64,000 nucleotides of DNA from positions 620,001 to 684,000 of the forward strand of contig RHPI01001037.1 of assembly GCA_009103225.1 (NCBI GenBank), in the 5' to 3' direction. This DNA comes from Chlorokybus atmophyticus (taxonomy: Eukaryota; Plantae; Mesostigma and Chlorokybus algae). This document shows positions 49,595 to 64,000 of this stretch, one piece after another (the first letter of the stretch is position 1; each line of letters begins with the position of its first letter). The notes beneath the pieces were generated by a model. It did no database searches. It had not been told where the DNA came from and was given only the letters and a program-made list of their open reading frames with translations. Both the position numbers and the translations under genes were made by a program.

Positions 49595-50165
49595 TTTTCG
49601 ACTGAATGTTGTAATTATTATTATAATACATAGTATACAGACCTTAAAGCATGCTGCATGCGTAACGTCAAGTGCCGCCGCAAGCTCATTTGTATGCTTG
49701 TCCGTTGCGCGCGATGATGTATAACACATCTCTGTGTATGCTGTGGCCACTGAATAAACATAGCACCGCGCCGCGACTGTCTGACTGAGTGTTGCATTGC
49801 CATCTTGGTGACTTCGCCACGCCAAGTCTTCGTCCTTGGAACCACACATGTGACGAGAGCCTCCTCATCCCAAAGGTCAACCCGCACACAACATCCTCTT
49901 GCGCCAGCAGGTTGCCACCTTACGCTGCAGACTGGTGTTTTTCCCTTCCGTGCCTTCATTGCGCAAAGTAACAAATAAAAGAGTAATGTTGACCTGGGAA
50001 CCGTTTTTATATCGCTTTCAAAAAGGGTTGTAGACAGCTGAAGCTTGTATATACCCTTGTAACTACCCAAGTGGCTCTTAACATACGTGGTGTGTTAGTT
50101 TGTTGCATTGACGAGCAAGGTTGTTGTGTTTGCTTCATCCTGTGTGTGTGTTTGATGTTTCAGCC

Positions 50166-51590
50166 ATGGGGAAGCAAATCATGTGTCAGCGCATTGGCTG
50201 CGATGCCCTGTTCGACCCGACAGGCGAGAACCCCACAGACGCATGCCAATATCATCCTGGGGTTAGCGAGCTATTCATGTTGTTTATGCTTGAATCAAGC
50301 GCCAGCACTTGCACAGTCACTCACCGCGCGTTACATGTGTGCATTTGCGCGTGTTGGCGATGCTGTACGACAGCCGGTAAGCAGATGGCTGTCTGGAGGT
50401 TGTTTGAGTCGGGGATGCCTGTCTTACCTATGCTCTTCCTGCATACGCACAGCCTCTGTTTCACGATGGTAACAAGGAGTGGAGCTGCTGCAAGCAAAAA
50501 AGCTATGACTTCAGTCTGTTCATGCAGTTGCCGGGGTAAGACATGGCAGATTGATGGTTGCTGCACACACACATAGCCGCGTGCAAGCATTGATATGGCT
50601 TCATACGCATGCGATTGTACGCACGCAAATGTCAAGTTGTAAGCTCTTTATCGTTCTTGATGGCATACATGCACTAGTTAGGTGTTCAGTCCAGCAGTGT
50701 TGCAAACTGTTATTCTGTGTTTCTGCCTTGTGCATATGTGCCGCCTACACGATGAAGGCTGCTCAAAAGTGATGTGTTGTTCAACTTCCAGTTGTCAGAA
50801 GGGTCCGCACTCGGCAGAGAAGCCACCGAAGCCGGAGCCGAAGCCCGTTTCCATGGACAGCAAACTGGCGGCTGTGCGGTTGAACGACAGCAGCAGCAAG
50901 CCTGCTCAATTGCCAGCTAGCAAGCCTTCTTCCTCGAGTTTGGACAAGAGCCAATGCCAGCGCTGCCGGCAAGGCTTCTACTGCTCAGAACACGCCGCTG
51001 TACCAGGTACATCGTCATGTGCGACAGTTGAAAGCTGTTCAGTAGCGTTGAGATCAGTGATGTGAACATGGTAGTTATACATAAGAGTGTGTGTGTGTGT
51101 CATAGGGGTAACATCTGCAGGTACAGAAGCATCCACGACTGGCGTGTCCCTGAGGGTATCAACTACACCTTTGCCGTCATTATTCAGTAGCCACAATGAT
51201 TTTTGTGAAGGCAGTGCTGGTTTAGTTGAGCCTAAAGCGAAGAAAGAAGGACAGCCCGTTGTTGCCACTAATCAAGGTGGTCATAGTGCCTCATCAGAGG
51301 TGGACTTGGATGCGCAGCGGGTGTGCCGAAATAAAGGCTGCGGTGCAAGCTTTACCGAGCGTGAGAACAGCGACACCACTTGCAAGTATCACCCGGGGCC
51401 CGCAGTGTTTCACGACCGCAAGAAAGGGGTAAGTGAATGGGGTTGGAGTGCAAGGAGGTGTTGTGATCTGCTGAGGCTATTAATTCTTGATTTCGTGCTG
51501 CAGTGGGCGTGCTGCAATGTGCATGTTAACGACTTTGACGAGTTCATGACCATCGCACCGTGCACAGTCGGCCGCCACAGCGCTGGCTAG
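50166..51590 (+). CDS. RAR1: RAR1-type CHORD protein (CHORD-I, CCCH linker, CHORD-II; no CS domain)
   Basis: CQRIGCDALF...CQYHPG|..FHDGNKEWSCC; linker CQRCRQGFYCSEH; CRNKGCGASF...CKYHPGPAVFHDRKKG|WACC...CTVGRH then stop. Confidence 0.88.
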
Positions 51591-51744: not shown

Positions 51745-52458
51745 NNNNNNNNNNNNNNNNNNNNNNNNNNNNNNNNNNNNNNNNNNNNNNNNNNNNNNNN
51801 NNNNNNNNNNNNNNNNNNNNNNNNNNNNNNNNNNNNNNNNNNNNNNNNNNNNNNNNNNNNNNNNNNNNNNNNNNNNNNNNNNNNNNNNNNNNNNNNNNNN
51901 NNNNNNNNNNNNNNNNNNNNNNNNNNNNNNNNNNNNNNNNNNNNNNNNNNNNNNNNNNNNNNNNNNNNNNNNNNNNNNNNNNNNNNNNNNNNNNNNNNNN
52001 NNNNNNNNNNNNNNNNNNNNNNNNNNNNNNNNNNNNNNNNNNNNNNNNNNNNNNNNNNNNNNNNNNNNNNNNNNNNNNNNNNNNNNNNNNNNNNNNNNNN
52101 NNNNNNNNNNNNNNNNNNNNNNNNNNNNNNNNNNNNNNNNNNNNNNNNNNNNNNNNNNNNNNNNNNNNNNNNNNNNNNNNNNNNNNNNNNNNNNNNNNNN
52201 NNNNNNNNNNNNNNNNNNNNNNNNNNNNNNNNNNNNNNNNNNNNNNNNNNNNNNNNNNNNNNNNNNNNNNNNNNNNNNNNNNNNNNNNNNNNNNNNNNNN
52301 NNNNNNNNNNNNNNNNNNNNNNNNNNNNNNNNNNNNNNNNNNNNNNNNNNNNNNNNNNNNNNNNNNNNNNNNNNNNNNNNNNNNNNNNNNNNNNNNNNNN
52401 NNNNNNNNNNNNNNNNNNNNNNNNNNNNNNNNNNNNNNNNNNNNNNNNNNNNNNNNNN
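51745..52458. other. Assembly gap followed by (CT)n
   Basis: N run, then ~18 CT units. Confidence 1.
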
Positions 52459-52750: not shown

Positions 52751-53134
52751 CTGTTGGTATAGTTGGTGCGGTTTTCTTAATGAAGATTGTGGTCAGATTG
52801 ACATCAGACTACCTGTAACACAATCTACAAGGCTGTTCGCAAAATGACCCGAGTCAGAGGCCAGCGATACCTATCAGGTCGAACCATGTGAGAGCATCCA
52901 GGCGCACTGCTCTGCTTTCCTGCGATTGCTCATGACTTGTGCATAAGGACATAACTAAGCACAAGACATTTACTTGACAGCCCTGGATTCGCGCATCTCG
53001 ATGTCCAGAGGCAACACAGCAGCAAGGCAAGAGCATACTGAACGTCGCCGGACATTCATTGCCAACCACTAATGGGGTTTGTGAAATACGCAACAACTTG
53101 GTCTGAAGGCAAGTCTACTGGTCACAGATTTGAA

Positions 53135-56100
53135 TCATGGCGAGGATGATACCGACCGCAAACTAAGCTGAGATATGGCGCGCTGCAAGTTGGTGTTTAT
53201 CGTCAACTGCTTGTGCGGCATGCGTTCGCCTGTCATCGGAGAAACTTCATTCTGCACAAACCACTGCTCTATTGCAACCTTCTCGTATGAGTAACCATCA
53301 GCGGCGACCACGGGGTCCTGCAAGTACCCGTCACAGTGAGTGCCACATCAGGTGTCAAAGCAACCCAATATGCACACATGGGACAACTAGCCATGACAAG
53401 GAAACGAACCCTGTTTGCATCAGCAACTTACTGTCATGATTTGAGAAGTGATTGGACAGAAGAAACAGTCAATGTCGGGCGACTGGTCCACGTCAGGCCT
53501 GGCTCTTGAGCGGCATGCCACGCCTTCACGATTGAGGCGCTCTAGCGTGGGAAGCACCTGCAATGCCGAGTTAAGTCCGCCGATTGCAATCCTGCCATAC
53601 TGCATGCATGTCGCGCAAACAAACAGTACCTCTTGCGCCAGGTCAGGGCGACAGTGGCGATCTAATGATGCGCATTTAATAGCCAGGTCGGCCAGCTCTT
53701 CGGCAATACGTTCCGGCCAGGGCTCAGGCTTTGAATCCGCAATCTTGTAGAGCTGCCCTTCTCTTAGCGCATCAGATACGAGCCCATACAGGTTTAGCGG
53801 CGGCTTTCCAGTAAGCATCTCCAGCAACACTGCCAGGGAGTGGATTGCACGGAATTGAGCACAACCTGCAACAGTACCAGCAGATGACACACACCAGCAA
53901 GGCTTACCAATCCCAAAACTATATACATCCGACTTGGGCCCAAGCTGGCCAGAGCGGTAGTACTCAGGATCCACATAGAGGAGGGTCCCACCAGGGGATG
54001 AATCCATCAACACGGACATCTTCATGGTTCGTGCTCCGAAGGCAAGTTCGGGTGCGAGGCGGGCAAGCCCAAAATCGCCCACTTTTGCGTTGAAATTCGT
54101 ATCCAAAAGAACGTTGGCAGTCTTGAAGTCCCTGCAGAACAGACGTGTCAATTGAACCTCGTGCATAAAAACACACTTGCCGGTAGTGTGAAGGCCAGTG
54201 CTTGGCCAGCAGCCTGCTGATATGAGGCAGGCAGTGCTTTAATCGCGGGAGTCATACCTGTGAATAATTGGTGTGGGAAGTGAATGCAAAAACAACAGAC
54301 CACGCGCCGCTTGAACGGCAATGGCCAAGCGCTTGTCCCAAGGCAAAGGAGGCGTATTTCCACGGCAAAGCAAGCGATCTTCTAGGCTGCCCTGCTCGCA
54401 GAACTCGTACACCAGGGACTGTTGTCCTGGAACTGAGTGATGTCCCATCAGGGCAACAATGTGTGGATGCCTCACGTACCCCAGCACCTGTTCGCAACAA
54501 CCATGACAACCAGCACTTGCATGCTGCAAGTTGATGCGCAACAGTCATCATCATGACCAATGACTGGTACAGTTTGCAGACCAGCAAGTAACGCGGGTGC
54601 ACTTACTGGATTCCAGTATGAAGTTGACAAATTCTCGTGCACAGTGCAAAACTGGTACCAAATGACAGAGATATGCATTTGCTTGTGGACACGATGGCCA
54701 AAGCAAACTTGAACTGCACCTGTAGCTCCTTATCAAACTCAGTCGTTCCCTGCTGCCCGTGTTGGTTGAGACGTTTGATAGCCACAGGGGTGCCTGCTAC
54801 AGTGCCAAAGTATACAGGACCAAACGCTCCTTCACCGATCTTATTTTTTGCGTTGAAATTGCCAGTGGCTATCTTAAGCTCCTCCCACTCAAACTGCGAA
54901 GCATCCAGTACTTTAAGCCGCAATGACAGCAACGAACCAACATGACCACTTGAACACTGTGTATGGAACCAACCTGCCGCAGCTTAGCTTGTGACATTTG
55001 TAAGTTTTTCAAGAAGTCATTCAACTGGGCCTGCATGTCGGTGACTTTTCTGTCAATCGCATCCACTTTGGGGGCCATCTTCCGAATGTCCCCTAGAAGT
55101 TGCATCAACTCCGAGTCCCTTTCACCACCATTCTTGGCAACGATCATTGGCAACTCCTCATGATCCTTTACAGCGCCTTGTTGCAGTTCACGCACCCAAT
55201 ACTGCACGTCACATGCATGCATTGGTTACAGAGACAATATGTATACACACCTGAGTCCACAACAGCAGTGACAAGCTCACCTTCTCAGCATTGTCTGGCT
55301 TCTGCATCTTCACATATACTCGCAAAAGAATGTCTGTGCGCAATGCTGTCAATGCATCTCGCATATTTTCAGCCACCAGTATAAACTTCCGTTCATACAC
55401 ATCCCCTCGCAGAAAGCGCTTGAGTTCAAACAGCAATTCGCCTTCTTTGCGAGTCCACTTCTCCACCATCTCCTTGGCTGTTGCAAGCGTATCCTGCAAT
55501 GCAATGCAAAGATGAGGGTAGCTGCCAACAATCTGGCAACGCGACAACAGGGGACAGAGTTGCACACCTGGACGTACTGCAACCGGCTCACTGTAGTATG
55601 GACATCTGCCTCGTTGCCCAGCTGTATGTGCCTTGCGGACGACTGATCTGTCAACAATGGTTCCACAAGGCTCCTTATCTCTCTGGCTTGCCGCGCTAAA
55701 CTTGCACACCGCGCCTGCAACACAGCACCATTGCTGCCGCTTCTGGTACTAACAAGCTGGACATGCTAACTCCAGCAAAAACAACATTTTTTGCATGCAA
55801 TCTTACAAGAATAGACTGATGCAACTAATAGACAGCCAAAGTGTGCACTCTGTATCCGACCTTATTGGCGTTGCAAATGTCGTTCAACCTGTCCAGTTCC
55901 GCTGCCAAGAACACTATGCCGCGAATGCATCCAGCAAAAGGCATGACAGCTGTCGCTACTTGTACACCAGCTTCAAGCAAGCCTGCAGCCACGACACCAG
56001 CGGCGAGAATTCCACCACCGACAACGGCAGCACCACCCGCTGCAGCAACAGCCCTAGCAACGGCATGACCTGTAGATGCGGCAGAGAGTCAGCAGCAGCG

Positions 56101-57933
56101 CCCTGAGCCCGAGCCATTAAGCTGTTAGGCACGGTGGCATGGACTCACAGGCACACAAATTGCAAGCAAGCCACAACCACCACAGTCACAATTACACTGT
56201 GACGTAATTGTGAGCAGTTACAGTGTAATTGCTCACAATTACAGTGACACCTTGTTAACCTCAAGGAGGCTTACGGTGTGATGCCGGGTTCAACACGTTG
56301 CGCATGGATTCATTCTCAGCCTTTTCGCTGGCAGTTTTGCCATCAATATTTCTGAGAGTGGGGTCTCCACCACCTTCGAGCAGCACCTTCGCTATCTCCC
56401 CTTTTGATAGCACAGCGGCTTCATGTAAAGGGGTGTCCCCTCTCTAAGACAGCATCATGTTGGCATTTGCAACACTTTGTGAGGTGTGCACATGCAAATG
56501 AGGACAACCAAGCCAGTAGCCATACCGCATTACAAGCGTTGGGGTTCGCCCTGTGGTTGAGCAATTCCAGGACAGCAGATGTCTCCTCGTGTCCAGCAGC
56601 CCAGTGAAGCGGTGTAGAGTTTTGCTGAGCGCAGCATTCATGTCAAATACAGGTGAGCACAAGGTAGGATCAGCCAGATATATCTAAACAACTTCTCAAA
56701 TGCGTGCCTGTCAGACATCGCACAATGTGAAAGTTGCCGCTTGAACAATATTGCATTCTCATAACCATAAGTGCATGACGGCATAGCATGACAGCCATCT
56801 GGTGTATGAACGACAGCAGGCCAACAACGACTGGTGCAATGCATGACAGTTGTTCAACGATATGTTGCGAGGATGCACTTCTTACTTTGTTGACGGCATT
56901 CACGTCTGCACCTCCGTCACACAAGGCCCTAATGGTTGAACAACTTCCGGACAGGGCAGCGTTATGCAGCGGAGTCGTCCCGTCACGATTTGAGGCCGAT
57001 GGTTTGGCTCCATGCTGGATCAGCACCTGCAGAAACCAAGCACACCTACATCAGCACTAGTGGTGACCACAGGCCTAGTTGTCTTCCTGCGAGGCCGCTA
57101 ACTACGACTAATAAACCCTGAATTTCAACACACCACAGCCTGTTCATATCCCTTCCAAAGATGCGCACATCATACAGCACTACATTGTGCCAGTTTGTAG
57201 TGATAGATGCAATTCTTTGTGAGATTGTGACGAGTCCAACCACTGACGACACTCTGTATGTTGCTGACATCGAAAATATACAAGGACACACTGTCTCAAT
57301 GCCAGAAGACTTGCAAGATCACGACTGACAATTACGCAATGGTTGTGCAACAAACCACTGACCTTGACCATCTCCGCCTTGCCAAGCAAAGCCGCTTCGT
57401 GCAAAGGCGTGCTGCCCTCGTTGTTCTGTGCATTCACGTCCGCACCCCTGGCGATGAGCACCTCTGCCTCACGGGGCTGTCCATTCTTGACAACCCTGTG
57501 CAGAAGGGTGTTGCCGTCCTGTCCAACAAAACGCTGTAAACTTGAGAGCATCCACATCCGCGCTGCTGTACATACAAGCACAGCTGCGGTCAAGATGACG
57601 CAACACTGGACTCAGGATGTCTCTCGCCACCTGTACAGAACTACTCACCGTGCGAGATACCTGAGTGCGGGCATTGGGGTCTGCGTCTGCCGGCAGTGCG
57701 TGCCGGAAGTTTGGGGCAGATGCATAGTGGGTGTGTGGTTGTTGAAAATTATTAGGTGACCGCGGCGCCATTGGAGAAAAGGACTCCGTCCGTGCGCCTG
57801 TCGACGAGGGCAATGACGGGGACGAGTGCAAGGCACTGTAAACTGTCCCACTGGCGCTGCCATTGCCGTAAGGAGGCGGCTGAGGAGGGAGGTGTTCTTT
57901 TACCTTCTTGCTCCTGCCAAACAGCTGCTTCAT
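53135..57933 (-). CDS. Ankyrin repeat / MLKL-like four-helix bundle / IRAK-Pelle (RLCK-type) kinase / U-box protein
   Basis: ANK: [36 protein letters not shown]. Kinase: [45 protein letters not shown]-box: [10 protein letters not shown]|[21 protein letters not shown]...SPMT. Confidence 0.88.
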
Positions 57934-58616
57934 TCTGTGAGCGCCCTAGAGCAGGCCTCCCCTTTCTTGTTTAGCTCCAGGAACCACGCCGCCGCCGCCA
58001 CATCCGCCCTTCCCACTCGACCATGATGGCCACTGTTAGGCCTCGACACACAAACCCTAACTAGCTCACTAGCTCCTTGCCAACAGCGCCTCAAGAGCAA
58101 CGCGTCCGTCAGCTGTCCTGGGCGTACATACACTGCGCCTCAAGCAAGCCCCGAACACGTACCAAAGCAAACAACAGTGTCACAGCTGCGACGCAGCACA
58201 AGTAGGCCTAGCCGCAGCCTGGTCTTCCACAAGAGAAGCTTGCTCCTGTTGGGTTTAAGGCTTCGTAGAGGAGGTCTTGGGCAACAAGCACCCGCTCACT
58301 GAACCACTCCTCATCCGCCGCCGCCGCCGCCGGCACAGCAGAGATGGAGTCGGGCGCGCATGCAATGTCGCCTGCTGGCAGGATTGCGCGCCACACAATA
58401 ATTACGTGACGTATTTGCCATGTTGCGTCGTAATGTCCAAGTTTCTTCCAAGTTGGGTCTACACTACAGTAACTGTAGGTTTAGGGACCTGGCCTAGTAG
58501 GGGCCCTAGGCAGAGCTGTAGCGTTACTCTGGTACACGGTGCATAATTCTTAGCTGGGATGGAGGCTGAGTCGGTCTGTGTGCGGCGGTGAATTGGTAAA
58601 TTTGTGTATCTGAGTA

Positions 58617-61117: not shown

Positions 61118-64000
61118 TTACCGTTCGCGTGTGGACACAGTACTCCAGTACCCCCGAAGAACCTCTTGGCAGTTGGTAAGATTCCTTTCGGGCTCCCATG
61201 TATTGTGTTCAACACCATACCCTTTCCATTTCACCAAGTAGGACGGCGCGCGTCCGCGTCGAGGCTTACGGTGACTTAGGATTGCTTCCACCTCATACTC
61301 AAATGTATTGTCACCATCCACTGCGACTGGGGGTGGAGGAGGTTGAACCCGACCGTCTGATCGGTACGGTTTCAGTACACTCACATGAAACACATTGTGA
61401 ATTCGTATCGACATTGGTAAATCCAAACGATACGCGTGAGTGCCGACCCGATCAATCACTTTGAAAGGGCCTATCCAACGAGGGAAAAATTTACGGGTAC
61501 CCACTCCCTTGATGGATATATTTTTGGTACTCAAAAGTACTGAACAGCCCACATCGTAGCTGGCCTCCCTACGATGCGCATCAGCATGGGCTTTTTGTCT
61601 ATCTTGCGCTGCGCGCAGACAGTGCTTTGCCAACGCTAACCTATCCTGCATGGCCGAAGCCATCTCGCGCGCTGCAGGTACGCGAGTTATATCGGTTGCG
61701 GGCAATTTTAAATTCGCAGGACTCAGTGGATGCACGCCGTAATTTAAAAAGAACGGCGTTTCCTGCACACTCTCTTGCCAAGCATTGTTGATCGCAAACT
61801 CAGCCATTGGAAGATAAATATCCCAATCAGACTGATTTGGACTCACATAATGCCGAATGGTTTCTTCAATCACTTGATTGGCGCGTTCTGTTTGCCCATC
61901 CGTTTGTGGATGATAAGCTGTGCTCATATTCTGCTGAATGCGTAAGAAGCTGCATAGCGACTTCCAGAATTGAGCTACAAATCGCGGATCGCGATCAGAC
62001 ACAAAGTTGCGCGGCAGGCCGTGCAACTTAAAAACAGACGCGACAAAAACCATTGCTAAATCGCGGGAGCCTATCTCCGTGCAACAAGGGATAATATGAA
62101 CCATTTTTGTCAATTGGTCCACAAAAACTGCAACCGCAGTGTGGCCTAATTGTGTCTTAGGGAGCTCAGTAATAAGGTCCATACTCACCCTTTCCCATTT
62201 GCCATCAGGAACAGGCAAAGGTCGCAGCAACCCAGCGGGATTCTGACGTAACGGCTTGTCACGCTGACATTTGTCACAGGTGTCAACATAACGCTTTACG
62301 TCAACAGGCAACGATGGCCACCAGTACAGCTGTTGCGCTGCCTTGGTAGTCTTGCGATTTCCAAAGTGCCCAGCGTACGGTGGGTCGTGTACATCAGCTA
62401 TGCATTGCATGCGTAGCCCAGCATGGTCAGGTATCACCAAGCTAGCACCCATATAATACAAGTTGTCTCGTGCTTCAAGCTGTTGTATATTCTCTTGCCG
62501 TGAGAACCATGGGTCTAAGGAATACCCATGCAAAACAGATTGCACAAATGCATCATTAGCGGGCAATGTAACTTGCGTCGCAAGCAATTGCGCACGCATA
62601 ACTGCCAATAATGACGGACAGCGATTTAAGGGATCTGCCACATTAGTTCTGCCAGGCCGATATACCCATTCAAAAGTAAATCGCGACAGAAACTCATTCC
62701 AGCGAGCTTGCCTACGTGACAAGGTCAGCTGCGTTGAGAAGTATACTAATGGGTTGTGATCAGTCACCACTGTGAACTGAACTCCCTCTAAGTAACATCG
62801 CCAAGTTTCGAGAGCATGTACGACACCAAGCAACTCTTGCTCAGTAGTAGTGTAGTTTACCTCCGCTGGGATAAACTTCCTACTTTCATAAGCACATGGT
62901 CTGCCGTCTTGCAGTAGTACTGCACCACACCCAAGGGTGGAAGCATCACTGACCACAGTGAAATGTTTATCCCAATTTGGCAATGCCAATACTGGAGCTG
63001 AAGTTAATGCTAACTTCACTTGTTGCATAGCAGCTTCTTGGTCTGACGTCCAAGAAAATGGCGCGTCCTTTCGCAACAATTTAGTCAAGGGCATTACAAC
63101 TGTAGAATAACCCATCATAAATTTGCGAAAATAATTTGCCAATCCCAAAAATGATCTCAGTTGATGAATATTTTTGGGTTGAGGCCAATTCTTGACAACT
63201 TGCACCTTGCGAGGGTCAGGCTTTACACCCGCACCACTCACAACATGTCCCAAGAATGGTAACTCCGATTTGCAAAAGTCACATTTTGCAAGGCTGGCAA
63301 ATAAATGATGCTTCCGCAACAAAGTAAACACCGCTTCTAAGTGTTGCTTATGTTCCTCTTTGGTTTTACTAAAGACAATAATGTCATCCAAGTAAACCAT
63401 AACATACTTGCCAAGTATATTACCGAAAATTTTATTCATTTCCTTCTGAAACACAGCAGGCGCATTCGTCAATCCAAAGGGTAGCACTTTGTATTGATAA
63501 TGGCCCGAAGGTGTTCTGAAAGCTGTCTTATAGACATCAGCGGAATGAATTCGGATCTGATGATATCCACTTGTCAGGTCTAATGTACTGAAGTATGCAT
63601 TACCTGATAGTTTATCAAACACGTCATCAATCCGTGGCAACGGGTATCGATTTTTCACCGTGATTTTGTTTAAAGCACGATAGTCCACACACATGCGCAA
63701 TTTTCCATTCTTTTTCATCACAAATAGGATGGGTGCGCCAAAGGGTGAAGAACTTGGTTCAATCAATCCTTTTTCCAATAACTCCTTGATTTGTGTTTCC
63801 ATTTCCCCCCTTTCTCTAGGGCTTAGCCTATATATTGGCCGAAAAGGAGGATCACTATCAGGAATTAATGGTATAGTGTGTCCGACACCTCGGTCAGGAG
63901 GCAAGCCCGGCAACTCATCTGAGAACACATCTTGATATTCCTCAATGAGGTCTGCCACACCTTCAGTACTACCCGGCGCAATGTCATCTGATGAAGACAA
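61118..64000 (-). CDS. pol: Intact Ty3/gypsy chromovirus pol (RT, RNase H, integrase, chromodomain), truncated by the window edge
   Basis: 960-aa uninterrupted ORF: LRMCVDY, YLDDII, SDAS...EQELLGVVHAL, HDPPYAGH...CDKC, VSMDLI...VSDRD...ERAN, GPF, YEVEAIL...YLVKWKGY. Confidence 0.97.
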   Translation of the reverse strand: MSSSDDIAPGSTEGVADLIEEYQDVFSDELPGLPPDRGVGHTIPLIPDSDPPFRPIYRLSPRERGEMETQIKELLEKGLIEPSSSPFGAPILFVMKKNGKLRMCVDYRALNKITVKNRYPLPRIDDVFDKLSGNAYFSTLDLTSGYHQIRIHSADVYKTAFRTPSGHYQYKVLPFGLTNAPAVFQKEMNKIFGNILGKYVMVYLDDIIVFSKTKEEHKQHLEAVFTLLRKHHLFASLAKCDFCKSELPFLGHVVSGAGVKPDPRKVQVVKNWPQPKNIHQLRSFLGLANYFRKFMMGYSTVVMPLTKLLRKDAPFSWTSDQEAAMQQVKLALTSAPVLALPNWDKHFTVVSDASTLGCGAVLLQDGRPCAYESRKFIPAEVNYTTTEQELLGVVHALETWRCYLEGVQFTVVTDHNPLVYFSTQLTLSRRQARWNEFLSRFTFEWVYRPGRTNVADPLNRCPSLLAVMRAQLLATQVTLPANDAFVQSVLHGYSLDPWFSRQENIQQLEARDNLYYMGASLVIPDHAGLRMQCIADVHDPPYAGHFGNRKTTKAAQQLYWWPSLPVDVKRYVDTCDKCQRDKPLRQNPAGLLRPLPVPDGKWERVSMDLITELPKTQLGHTAVAVFVDQLTKMVHIIPCCTEIGSRDLAMVFVASVFKLHGLPRNFVSDRDPRFVAQFWKSLCSFLRIQQNMSTAYHPQTDGQTERANQVIEETIRHYVSPNQSDWDIYLPMAEFAINNAWQESVQETPFFLNYGVHPLSPANLKLPATDITRVPAAREMASAMQDRLALAKHCLRAAQDRQKAHADAHRREASYDVGCSVLLSTKNISIKGVGTRKFFPRWIGPFKVIDRVGTHAYRLDLPMSIRIHNVFHVSVLKPYRSDGRVQPPPPPVAVDGDNTFEYEVEAILSHRKPRRGRAPSYLVKWKGYGVEHNTWEPERNLTNCQEVLRGYWSTVSTRER

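What the first reader, a model, noticed from the sequence alone, without database searches (positions are those of the whole stretch)
55270..56070. MLKL-like four-helix bundle fused between ankyrin repeats and an active Pelle kinase plus U-box
Three exons give ...[28 protein letters not shown]|[21 protein letters not shown]...VSRLQYVQ|[17 protein letters not shown]...[32 protein letters not shown], followed by a coiled brace-like region and the kinase. This matches the pattern of the MLKL N-terminal/MCAfunc-type domain (N-K-x-x-C-x-x-L; K-R-F-L...Y...F). Established: these domains form membrane pores or channels in animal and plant MLKL and in fungal HeLo-like proteins, and MLKL has a pseudokinase. 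Here VAIK, HRD and DFG are intact, and plant U-box kinases (RLCK-IX) usually have a USP-like N-terminus instead. Inference: a single-chain sensor (ANK), executioner (4HB), kinase and E3 ligase, a candidate algal immune or cell-death protein with an architecture I do not recognise.
Basis: partly seen in the sequence, partly recalled or inferred. Interest (0 to 1): 0.78.

Follow-up and report, generated by a model that had tools for sequence, protein, structure and literature searches.

The report
Algal ankyrin–MLKL-bundle–kinase–U-box protein
An early-branching green alga (Chlorokybus) expresses one 923/927-residue protein that joins ankyrin repeats, a greasy Gly/Ala stretch, a helical domain of the MLKL "cell-death bundle" family, an apparently active kinase and a U-box ubiquitin ligase; the parts and their pairings are known in plants, but I found this full combination nowhere else.

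Summary
The three exons at 55270-56070 belong to a 15-exon minus-strand gene (CDS 53135-57933). Intron-free contigs from two studies run across all 14 GT-AG introns, so ankyrin repeats, helical domain, kinase and U-box are one transcript. The product is database protein P0001 (Chlorokybus atmophyticus, jgi/Chlat1/4379).

**MLKL reading.** The helical region is the only Pfam match there. MLKL_N (PF22215) scores 28.7 bits against a cut-off of 27 when the domain is cut out, and 23.5 bits on the whole protein. Language-model neighbours are MLKL_N/MCAfunc/RPW8 clusters. A 95-99% variant differs in this region by 11 silent changes and 1 replacement. The fold test failed: with no relatives to align, both AlphaFold models had pLDDT of 51-55.

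**Kinase and U-box.** This half is 43-48% identical to land-plant PUB35-type U-box kinases and branches at their base, but ankyrin replaces the usual USP domain.

**Novelty.** It is less than claimed. MLKL-bundle plus active kinase (wheat Pm13, R3AK) and bundle plus U-box (PUB13/45) are published. The full combination matched only itself.

Two other first-reader notes of this scan cover the same stretch, and a third reports a second bundle-plus-U-box gene elsewhere in this genome. Killing activity is untested.

The parts
53135..57933 (-). Whole coding region: 15 exons, 14 GT-AG introns, 927 aa (923 aa with the alternative exon-1 donor). It equals database protein P0001 (jgi/Chlat1/4379).
   Evidence: Spliced contigs from two studies; exon table and open frame; P0001 is 100% identical to exon 8 and reads like the spliced model printed, apart from the four residues of the alternative donor (read by eye, no alignment run)
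57649..57933 (-). Exon 1: Pro/Ser-rich N-terminal 95 aa with no domain. Alternative donors 57649/57661 give or remove four residues (VSRT).
   Evidence: No Pfam family; X1 and X2 pieces end 12 nt apart
56275..57518 (-). Exons 2-5: five ankyrin repeats plus a partial cap (P0001 92-275).
   Evidence: Pfam Ank_2 9.4e-46, Ank with 5 stretches
55945..56064 (-). Hydrophobic Gly/Ala-rich stretch (P0001 282-321) that runs on into the first bundle helix (to about 336). Candidate membrane-inserting segment.
   Evidence: Kyte-Doolittle 19-residue means of 1.5-2.2 over about 50 residues, the highest in the protein; many small-xxx-small spacings; no Pfam family
55160..55905 (-). MLKL_N-type helical domain (P0001 335-483), spread over exons 6-9.
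   Evidence: PF22215 at 27.1-28.7 bits against a cut-off of 27 on cut-outs, profile 7-141/142; exon 8 alone E=0.0045; Atlas neighbours MLKL_N/MCAfunc/RPW8; 11 silent to 1 replacement change against variant X4
54974..55159 (-). Coiled, brace-like helix between bundle and kinase (P0001 about 484-545).
   Evidence: One long predicted helix; weak coiled-coil-type Pfam hits to NPV_P10 and CLZ. 'Brace' is inferred from its position.
53633..54854 (-). RLK/Pelle-type Ser/Thr kinase (P0001 559-820) with intact catalytic motifs.
   Evidence: Pkinase 2.4e-41; best solved relatives PBL2, BIK1, FERONIA and IRAK4; motifs located
53171..53470 (-). C-terminal U-box (P0001 851-912).
   Evidence: PF04564 6.2e-14; colinear with PUB35-type proteins to the end

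Best explanation
**Shown.** This is a real, expressed, selectively constrained Chlorokybus gene for a single 923/927-aa protein. Its order is: disordered N-terminus, five ankyrin repeats, a roughly 50-residue hydrophobic Gly/Ala stretch, an MLKL_N-family helical domain, a coiled connector, an RLK/Pelle kinase with all catalytic residues, and a U-box. The kinase and U-box half belongs to the lineage of land-plant PUB32-35/50-53 U-box kinases.

**Inferred mechanism** (about 0.35 as a whole). It works like the grass MLKL_NTD-kinases:
- At rest, the bundle is held by the connector and the kinase.
- A partner bound by the ankyrin repeats, or clustering through the coil, lets the kinase phosphorylate in cis or in trans.
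- The bundle, with the greasy Gly/Ala helix ahead of it, then engages or perturbs a membrane. The outcome could be ion leak or cell death.
- The U-box marks the protein itself or bound targets for turnover.

Because the bundle is not at the free N-terminus, the hydrophobic stretch may instead be a permanent hairpin anchor that keeps the whole enzyme at a membrane.
For: - One transcript, two studies, 14 canonical introns; open frame.
- MLKL_N is the only family matched in 318-490, colinear over almost the whole profile and at the curated cut-off. The next best family is five orders of magnitude weaker.
- An independent language-model search gives only MLKL_N/MCAfunc/DUF7792/RPW8 clusters among its family-annotated neighbours, sharing 176-194 features.
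- Purifying selection: 31 silent to 9 replacement differences overall, and 11 to 1 in the bundle.
- Kinase motifs are intact. Kinase plus U-box is 43-48% identical to PUB35-type proteins over 97-99% of its length. The clade has support 97 against RLK outgroups.
- Published precedent: bundle-brace-active kinase proteins that confer resistance or kill cells (PMC10951266; 10.64898/2026.08.07.743466), and a hydrophobic or glycine-zipper helix ahead of HeLo-like domains (10.1101/839308; PMC12881547).
Against: - The Pfam score is marginal (23.5 bits on the full protein). The N-terminal half of the domain gives no hit on its own.
- No solved MLKL or RPW8 chain is found by sequence.
- The fold is unconfirmed.
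- No relative of the bundle was found in 1.84 billion representatives or by word search, so nothing shows conservation beyond Chlorokybus.
- Executioner bundles known so far sit at a free N-terminus; this one has about 320 residues in front of it.
- In PUB13/45-type ligases, a bundle of the same clan is not known to kill.
- No functional data of any kind exist.
Confidence: 0.6

Rival explanations
1. The bundle is a true member of the MLKL_N/MCAfunc clan, but it acts as in PUB13/45-type ligases. It would be a regulatory or docking domain of a membrane-anchored kinase-E3 signalling enzyme, with no pore or death function. The Gly/Ala stretch would be a plain hairpin anchor and the ankyrin repeats would recruit substrates.
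For: MCAfunc + U-box (+Arm) is reported as the oldest and most widespread pairing of this domain in streptophytes, charophytes included (PMC8049495). The bundle here is internal, not N-terminal. A related metagenomic protein, P0029, has ankyrin-kinase-U-box with no bundle at all, so the enzyme core works without it. AtMLKL immunity can be separated from cell death (10.1101/681015).
Against: Pfam matches MLKL_N, not MCAfunc, at E up to 10. The order bundle-coil-kinase is that of MLKL proteins, not of UND-U-box ligases. A strongly hydrophobic helix directly ahead of the bundle fits the membrane-acting members (10.1101/839308).
Confidence: 0.3
2. The region is only a lineage-specific helical spacer or coiled coil. 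The MLKL_N match and the language-model neighbours would reflect general helical composition, not common descent.
For: The score sits at the threshold. The N-terminal half is not significant alone. There are no sequence relatives anywhere. AlphaFold gives long loose helices, and Foldseek returns only generic coiled coils.
Against: The match is colinear over 135 of 142 profile positions. No other helical family comes within five orders of magnitude. All ten best family-annotated Atlas neighbours fall in one clan. Strong purifying selection argues against a mere spacer.
Confidence: 0.1

Closest known systems
Grass MLKL_NTD-kinase fusion proteins (wheat Pm13, R3AK)
   Same: MLKL_N-type bundle, helical brace, then an RLK/Pelle-type kinase that keeps its catalytic residues (PMC10951266; 10.64898/2026.08.07.743466).
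   Different: In those proteins the bundle is at the free N-terminus, there are no ankyrin repeats, no hydrophobic Gly/Ala stretch and no U-box, and the kinase is of the LRR_8B subfamily, not the PUB-kinase lineage. No detectable sequence similarity to the bundle here was found by the searches run.
Land-plant U-box kinases (PUB32-35, PUB50-53; 'U-box domain-containing protein 35')
   Same: Kinase plus C-terminal U-box, colinear, 43-48% identical over 97-99% of 378 residues. They form one clade in the tree.
   Different: Their N-terminus is a USP domain followed by a long linker. Here it is ankyrin repeats, a hydrophobic stretch and an MLKL_N bundle.
MCAfunc/UND + U-box (+Arm) ligases (PUB13, PUB45) and MCA channels
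   Same: A helical bundle of the same clan on one chain with a U-box; the pairing is old in streptophytes (PMC8049495). MCAfunc clusters are among the Atlas neighbours.
   Different: In those ligases the bundle directly precedes the U-box and Arm repeats follow. There is no kinase. The PF19584 profile does not match here at E up to 10.
Vertebrate MLKL and seed-plant AtMLKL1-3
   Same: Bundle-brace-kinase fold order, and a Pfam MLKL_N match.
   Different: Those have pseudokinases, an N-terminal bundle and no E3 domain. AtMLKLs were reported from seed plants only (10.1101/681015).
P0029, a metagenomic ankyrin-kinase-U-box protein (JGI)
   Same: Ankyrin repeats ahead of the same kinase-U-box core (48% identical). 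It branches next to P0001 at the base of the tree.
   Different: Its 150-residue linker has no MLKL_N match and no hydrophobic stretch.

Membership tests
MLKL_N / HeLo-like four-helix-bundle superfamily (Pfam PF22215) | Sequence match to the family profile at or above the curated cut-off | tested here: met
   28.7 bits (P0001:330-490), 27.5 (318-475) and 27.1 (276-550) against a cut-off of 27; profile positions 7-141 of 142. The result is marginal: 23.5 bits on the whole protein.
MLKL_N / HeLo-like four-helix-bundle superfamily (Pfam PF22215) | Compact four-helix-bundle fold that superposes on MLKL, AtMLKL or RPW8-type domains | tested here: inconclusive
   Two single-sequence AlphaFold2 runs gave pLDDT 54.7 and 51.4. 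They were all-helical but not packed. Foldseek against the PDB gave no hit with E<=0.001. No alignment could be built because no relatives were found.
MLKL_N / HeLo-like four-helix-bundle superfamily (Pfam PF22215) | Hydrophobic or glycine-zipper helix at the start of the domain, used for membrane targeting | tested here: inconclusive
   A strongly hydrophobic Gly/Ala stretch (282-336) with many small-xxx-small spacings and one GxxxG lies directly ahead of the bundle. Whether it corresponds to the published motif (10.1101/839308) was not aligned.
MLKL_N / HeLo-like four-helix-bundle superfamily (Pfam PF22215) | Membrane permeabilisation or cell death on activation | not testable with these tools
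   Needs expression assays.
MLKL-type proteins (bundle-brace-kinase or pseudokinase) | Domain order: bundle, helical brace, kinase fold | tested here: met
   MLKL_N 335-483, coil about 486-545, kinase 559-820.
MLKL-type proteins (bundle-brace-kinase or pseudokinase) | Bundle at the free N-terminus | tested here: not met
   About 320 residues (disordered region, ankyrin repeats, hydrophobic stretch) precede it.
MLKL-type proteins (bundle-brace-kinase or pseudokinase) | Catalytically dead kinase (vertebrate MLKL, AtMLKL) | tested here: not met
   GxGxxG, VAIK, HRD, DFG and DPE are all present. In this it resembles Pm13-type proteins (PMC10951266).
Plant U-box kinases (PUB32-35/50-53) | RLK/Pelle kinase followed by a C-terminal U-box, with family-level similarity | tested here: met
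   43-48% identity over 97-99% of residues 546-923. The clade is supported at 97 against RLK outgroups, on a quick tree with long branches.
Plant U-box kinases (PUB32-35/50-53) | N-terminal USP (universal stress protein-like) domain | tested here: not met
   No Usp hit in P0001. Seven of the ten relatives checked have a Usp hit, most of them below Pfam's cut-off of 24 bits.
MCAfunc/UND-U-box ligases (PUB13/45 type) | Match to PF19584, with the bundle directly ahead of the U-box and Arm repeats | tested here: not met
   No PF19584 hit at E up to 10. A kinase lies between bundle and U-box, and there are no Arm repeats. The only link is the Atlas neighbours.

The most novel reading that the evidence does not exclude
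The protein preserves an ancestral streptophyte single-chain death or ion-channel switch. In this reading a glycine-rich membrane helix plus MLKL bundle is controlled in cis by its own active kinase and E3 ligase and is armed through ankyrin repeats. It would be a one-protein counterpart of the RIPK3-MLKL-ubiquitin circuit, and land-plant U-box kinases would be descendants that swapped this front end for a USP domain.
Probability: 0.1. Interest if true: 0.8.

Novelty: new variant of a known kind. Interest (0 to 1): 0.5.

Why it matters
If the bundle is functional, MLKL-type modules coupled to an active kinase would reach back to the earliest-branching streptophyte algae. Plant MLKLs were first described from seed plants, and the active-kinase versions from grasses. 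It would also offer a natural protein in which phosphorylation, ubiquitination and a membrane-acting bundle can be studied on one chain. It further hints that the U-box kinase family of land plants once had a different front end. As it stands, it is a single-lineage protein with a marginal domain call and no functional data.

Tried and rejected
- **Exon 8 against 1.84 billion representatives (phmmer).** It found only itself. The second hit, P0002, is a repeat-rich CheA/CheW-like protein scored over 6 stretches and is spurious.
- **Word searches of the bundle region.** In the full-length context (318-548) only the protein itself was found. As a stand-alone 173-aa query at E up to 10, nothing was found.
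- **JGI/TARA metagenome scan.** One locus, L001, came back. It is an AT-rich contig of short ORFs that shares only a short coil motif by chance.
- **PDB by sequence.** Only weak NUP133-type chance hits, no MLKL.
- **AlphaFold2, twice, single sequence.** Confidence was too low to use, and the Foldseek hits on that model are meaningless.
- **Atlas search with exon 8 alone.** It gave unrelated bacterial families at low recognition.
- **The look-up of encoding contigs for P0001.** Not on record.
- **Not run.** No complex prediction was sent, because oligomerisation through the coil is only an inference here.
- **Joined model.** My own joined exon model was built only inside a script, to check the reading frame, and was never sent to a search tool. 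First searches went exon by exon by reference. Full-length searches used P0001, the database's own copy.
- **Chimeric gene model.** Considered and rejected, because two independent spliced contigs span it.

Full report
**Gene and transcript.** The finding lies on the minus strand. Stop-free segments and splice signals gave a provisional 15-exon model.

Laying public contigs on 53100-58000 settled it.
- Two intron-free contigs, X1 (3245 nt, 2013 study) and X2 (3170 nt, 2021 study), are both 100% identical to the window.
- They cross 13 listed joints. Each joint has exactly one CT..AC (GT-AG on the minus strand) placement.
- A 14th intron (57519-57648) follows from the piece ends and the GT-AG search.
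- The contigs are labelled 'RNA?', but the absence of all introns is itself evidence that they are transcripts.

The joined frame is open for 927 aa, from the ATG at 57933 to the stop at 53135-53137. X2 uses an in-frame donor 12 nt upstream, which gives 923 aa. A third contig, X4 (95-99% alike, same organism label), has the same joins and no indels across exons 2-10.

**How the searches were run.** The phmmer search of exon 8 against 1.84 billion representatives returned P0001. P0001 is a 923-aa protein that is 100% identical over the exon, and a source names it jgi/Chlat1/4379/Chrsp29S04519, that is Chlorokybus atmophyticus. It reads like the spliced model printed with X2's donor; I compared the two by eye and ran no alignment. 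All full-length work used P0001 as the reference. My own joined model was made only in a script, to check the frame, and was not sent to any search.

**Domains** (P0001 numbering).

| Residues | Feature | Evidence |
|---|---|---|
| 1-91 | Pro/Ser-rich, no family | |
| 92-275 | Five ankyrin repeats | Ank_2 9.4e-46 |
| 282-336 | Hydrophobic Gly/Ala stretch | |
| 335-483 | MLKL_N | see next section |
| about 486-545 | One long predicted helix | weak coiled-coil-type hits |
| 559-820 | Protein kinase | 2.4e-41 |
| 851-912 | U-box | 6.2e-14 |

- Kinase motifs: GEGAFG 565-570, VAIK 582-585, HRD 679-681 within HRDFKTAN, DFG 699-701 and DPEY 734-737.
- The best solved relatives of the kinase are PBL2, BIK1, RIPK, FERONIA and IRAK4, so the 'Pelle/RLCK' reading holds.
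- The hydrophobic stretch has 19-residue Kyte-Doolittle means of 1.5-2.2, the highest in the protein, in two peaks (about 288-311 and 317-335). It is rich in small-xxx-small spacings.

**Is the helical domain MLKL-like?**

For:
- PF22215 is the only family matched in this region at E up to 10 with any weight.
- Scores are 28.7 bits on 330-490, 27.5 on 318-475 and 27.1 on 276-550, against a curated cut-off of 27. The match is colinear over profile positions 7-141 of 142, with E about 1e-6.
- The next family is at E 0.05-0.2.
- Exon 8 alone gives E=0.0045 at positions 64-109. The C-terminal half gives 19.3 bits at positions 64-141.
- The language-model search of 318-490 gives hypothetical-protein clusters plus MLKL_N, MCAfunc, DUF7792 and RPW8 clusters at 0.90-0.93, with 176-194 shared features. 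All ten best family-annotated hits fall in one clan. This is a lead, but it is independent of HMMER.

Against:
- On the whole protein the score is 23.5 bits, below the cut-off.
- The N-terminal half alone gives nothing.
- No solved MLKL chain is found by sequence.
- The fold test failed for lack of an alignment. Two single-sequence AlphaFold2 runs gave pLDDT 54.7 and 51.4, with long unpacked helices, and Foldseek returned only generic coiled coils at E>0.2.

I put the homology at about 0.85 and treat the fold as untested.

**Constraint.** I mapped the 40 listed differences between the window and X4 onto codons. They give 31 silent and 9 replacement changes overall. In the bundle the split is 11 to 1, in the Gly/Ala stretch 3 to 2 (both conservative), and in the coil 4 to 2. 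Six further differences were not listed by the tool. The bundle is therefore under strong purifying selection within Chlorokybus.

**Relatives.**
- The bundle-coil region has no detectable relative. Only P0001 itself was found among 1.84 billion representatives with exon 8, and only itself in both word searches. The single metagenome hit is a chance coil motif on an AT-rich contig.
- The kinase and U-box half is 43-48% identical over 97-99% of its length to 'U-box domain-containing protein 35'-type proteins of angiosperms, ferns, lycophytes and Closterium.
- Seven of ten checked relatives have a Usp hit at the N-terminus, most of them below Pfam's cut-off of 24 bits. None has MLKL_N.
- One JGI metagenomic protein, P0029, has ankyrin-linker-kinase-U-box without a bundle.
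- A quick maximum-likelihood tree puts all kinase-U-box proteins in one clade against RLK outgroups (SH-aLRT 97). P0001 branches first, P0029 next, and the USP types lie within. The branches of P0001 and P0029 are long, so the order at the base is unsure.

**What is known.**
- Plant MLKLs with pseudokinases were described from seed plants (10.1101/681015).
- Wheat Pm13 is an MLKL_NTD-brace-kinase protein that keeps the catalytic residues and belongs to a large grass family (PMC10951266).
- R3AK is a similar 'helper MLKL' whose bundle executes cell death (10.64898/2026.08.07.743466).
- The MCAfunc domain, whose clusters appear among the Atlas neighbours here, is reported to have U-box and Arm as its original partners from charophytes onward (PUB13, PUB45), and kinases as partners in monocots (PMC8049495).
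- A glycine-zipper or hydrophobic first helix is reported as needed for membrane targeting in HELLP, and as shared with MLKL and RPW8 (10.1101/839308; PMC12881547).

Each pairwise fusion seen here has a precedent. The five-part combination, the internal position of the bundle and the algal host do not.

**Mechanism.** My preferred reading is an MLKL-kinase-like switch with built-in E3 control, at or near a membrane. It is an inference from the anatomy.

The main rival is that the bundle is a docking or regulatory domain, as in UND-type ligases, and that the hydrophobic stretch is a plain hairpin anchor. Two hydrophobic peaks, with cytosolic-type domains on both sides, fit a hairpin.

**Surroundings**.
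- A CHORD-domain gene lies on the plus strand at about 50112-51587, convergent with this gene. It is cut by an assembly gap at 51745-52458.
- A Ty3/gypsy chromovirus pol frame lies at 61121-64000 on the minus strand.
- Neither bears on the function of this gene.

**Earlier scan notes.** Two first-reader notes cover this same stretch. Another (s1-192703) reports a second bundle + U-box + WD40 gene elsewhere in this genome; I could not reach it. Other notes named the organism, which P0001's source name confirms.

**Verdict.** This is a new variant of known kinds, of moderate interest.

Noticed in passing
window 57649-57661 (minus strand): Exon 1 has two in-frame donors 12 nt apart. X1 uses ACG|GTGAGT and X2 uses CAG|GTATCT, so the protein has or lacks four residues (VSRT). 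The database model uses the shorter form.
   Followed up: partly
window 50112-51587 (+ strand): Neighbouring convergent gene with CHORD domains (PF04968, 7.6e-20), RAR1/CHP-like. It runs into an assembly gap of 714 N at 51745-52458, which is followed by a (TC)n run.
   Followed up: partly
window 61121-64000 (minus strand): A 960-aa stop-free Ty3/gypsy chromovirus pol frame (RT, RNase H, integrase, SH3_Tf2-1, chromodomain) that runs off the window's end.
   Followed up: partly
window 54716-57508 (contig X4): A 95-99% identical spliced variant from a run of the same organism label keeps every splice join and the reading frame. Listed differences are 31 silent to 9 replacement. It may be a cryptic sister species, an allele or a recent paralogue.
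   Followed up: partly
P0029 (JGI metagenome protein, 684 aa): Ankyrin repeats, a 150-aa linker, then kinase and U-box, 48% identical to the core here but with no MLKL_N bundle. It suggests an ankyrin-type front end in more than one early-branching lineage.
   Followed up: partly
L001 1561-1878 (TARA scaffold): A small ORF on an AT-rich marine contig shares the coil motif [10 protein letters not shown] with residues 523-532 of the protein. The same stretch weakly matches baculovirus P10. I take it as a chance coiled-coil resemblance.
   Followed up: yes
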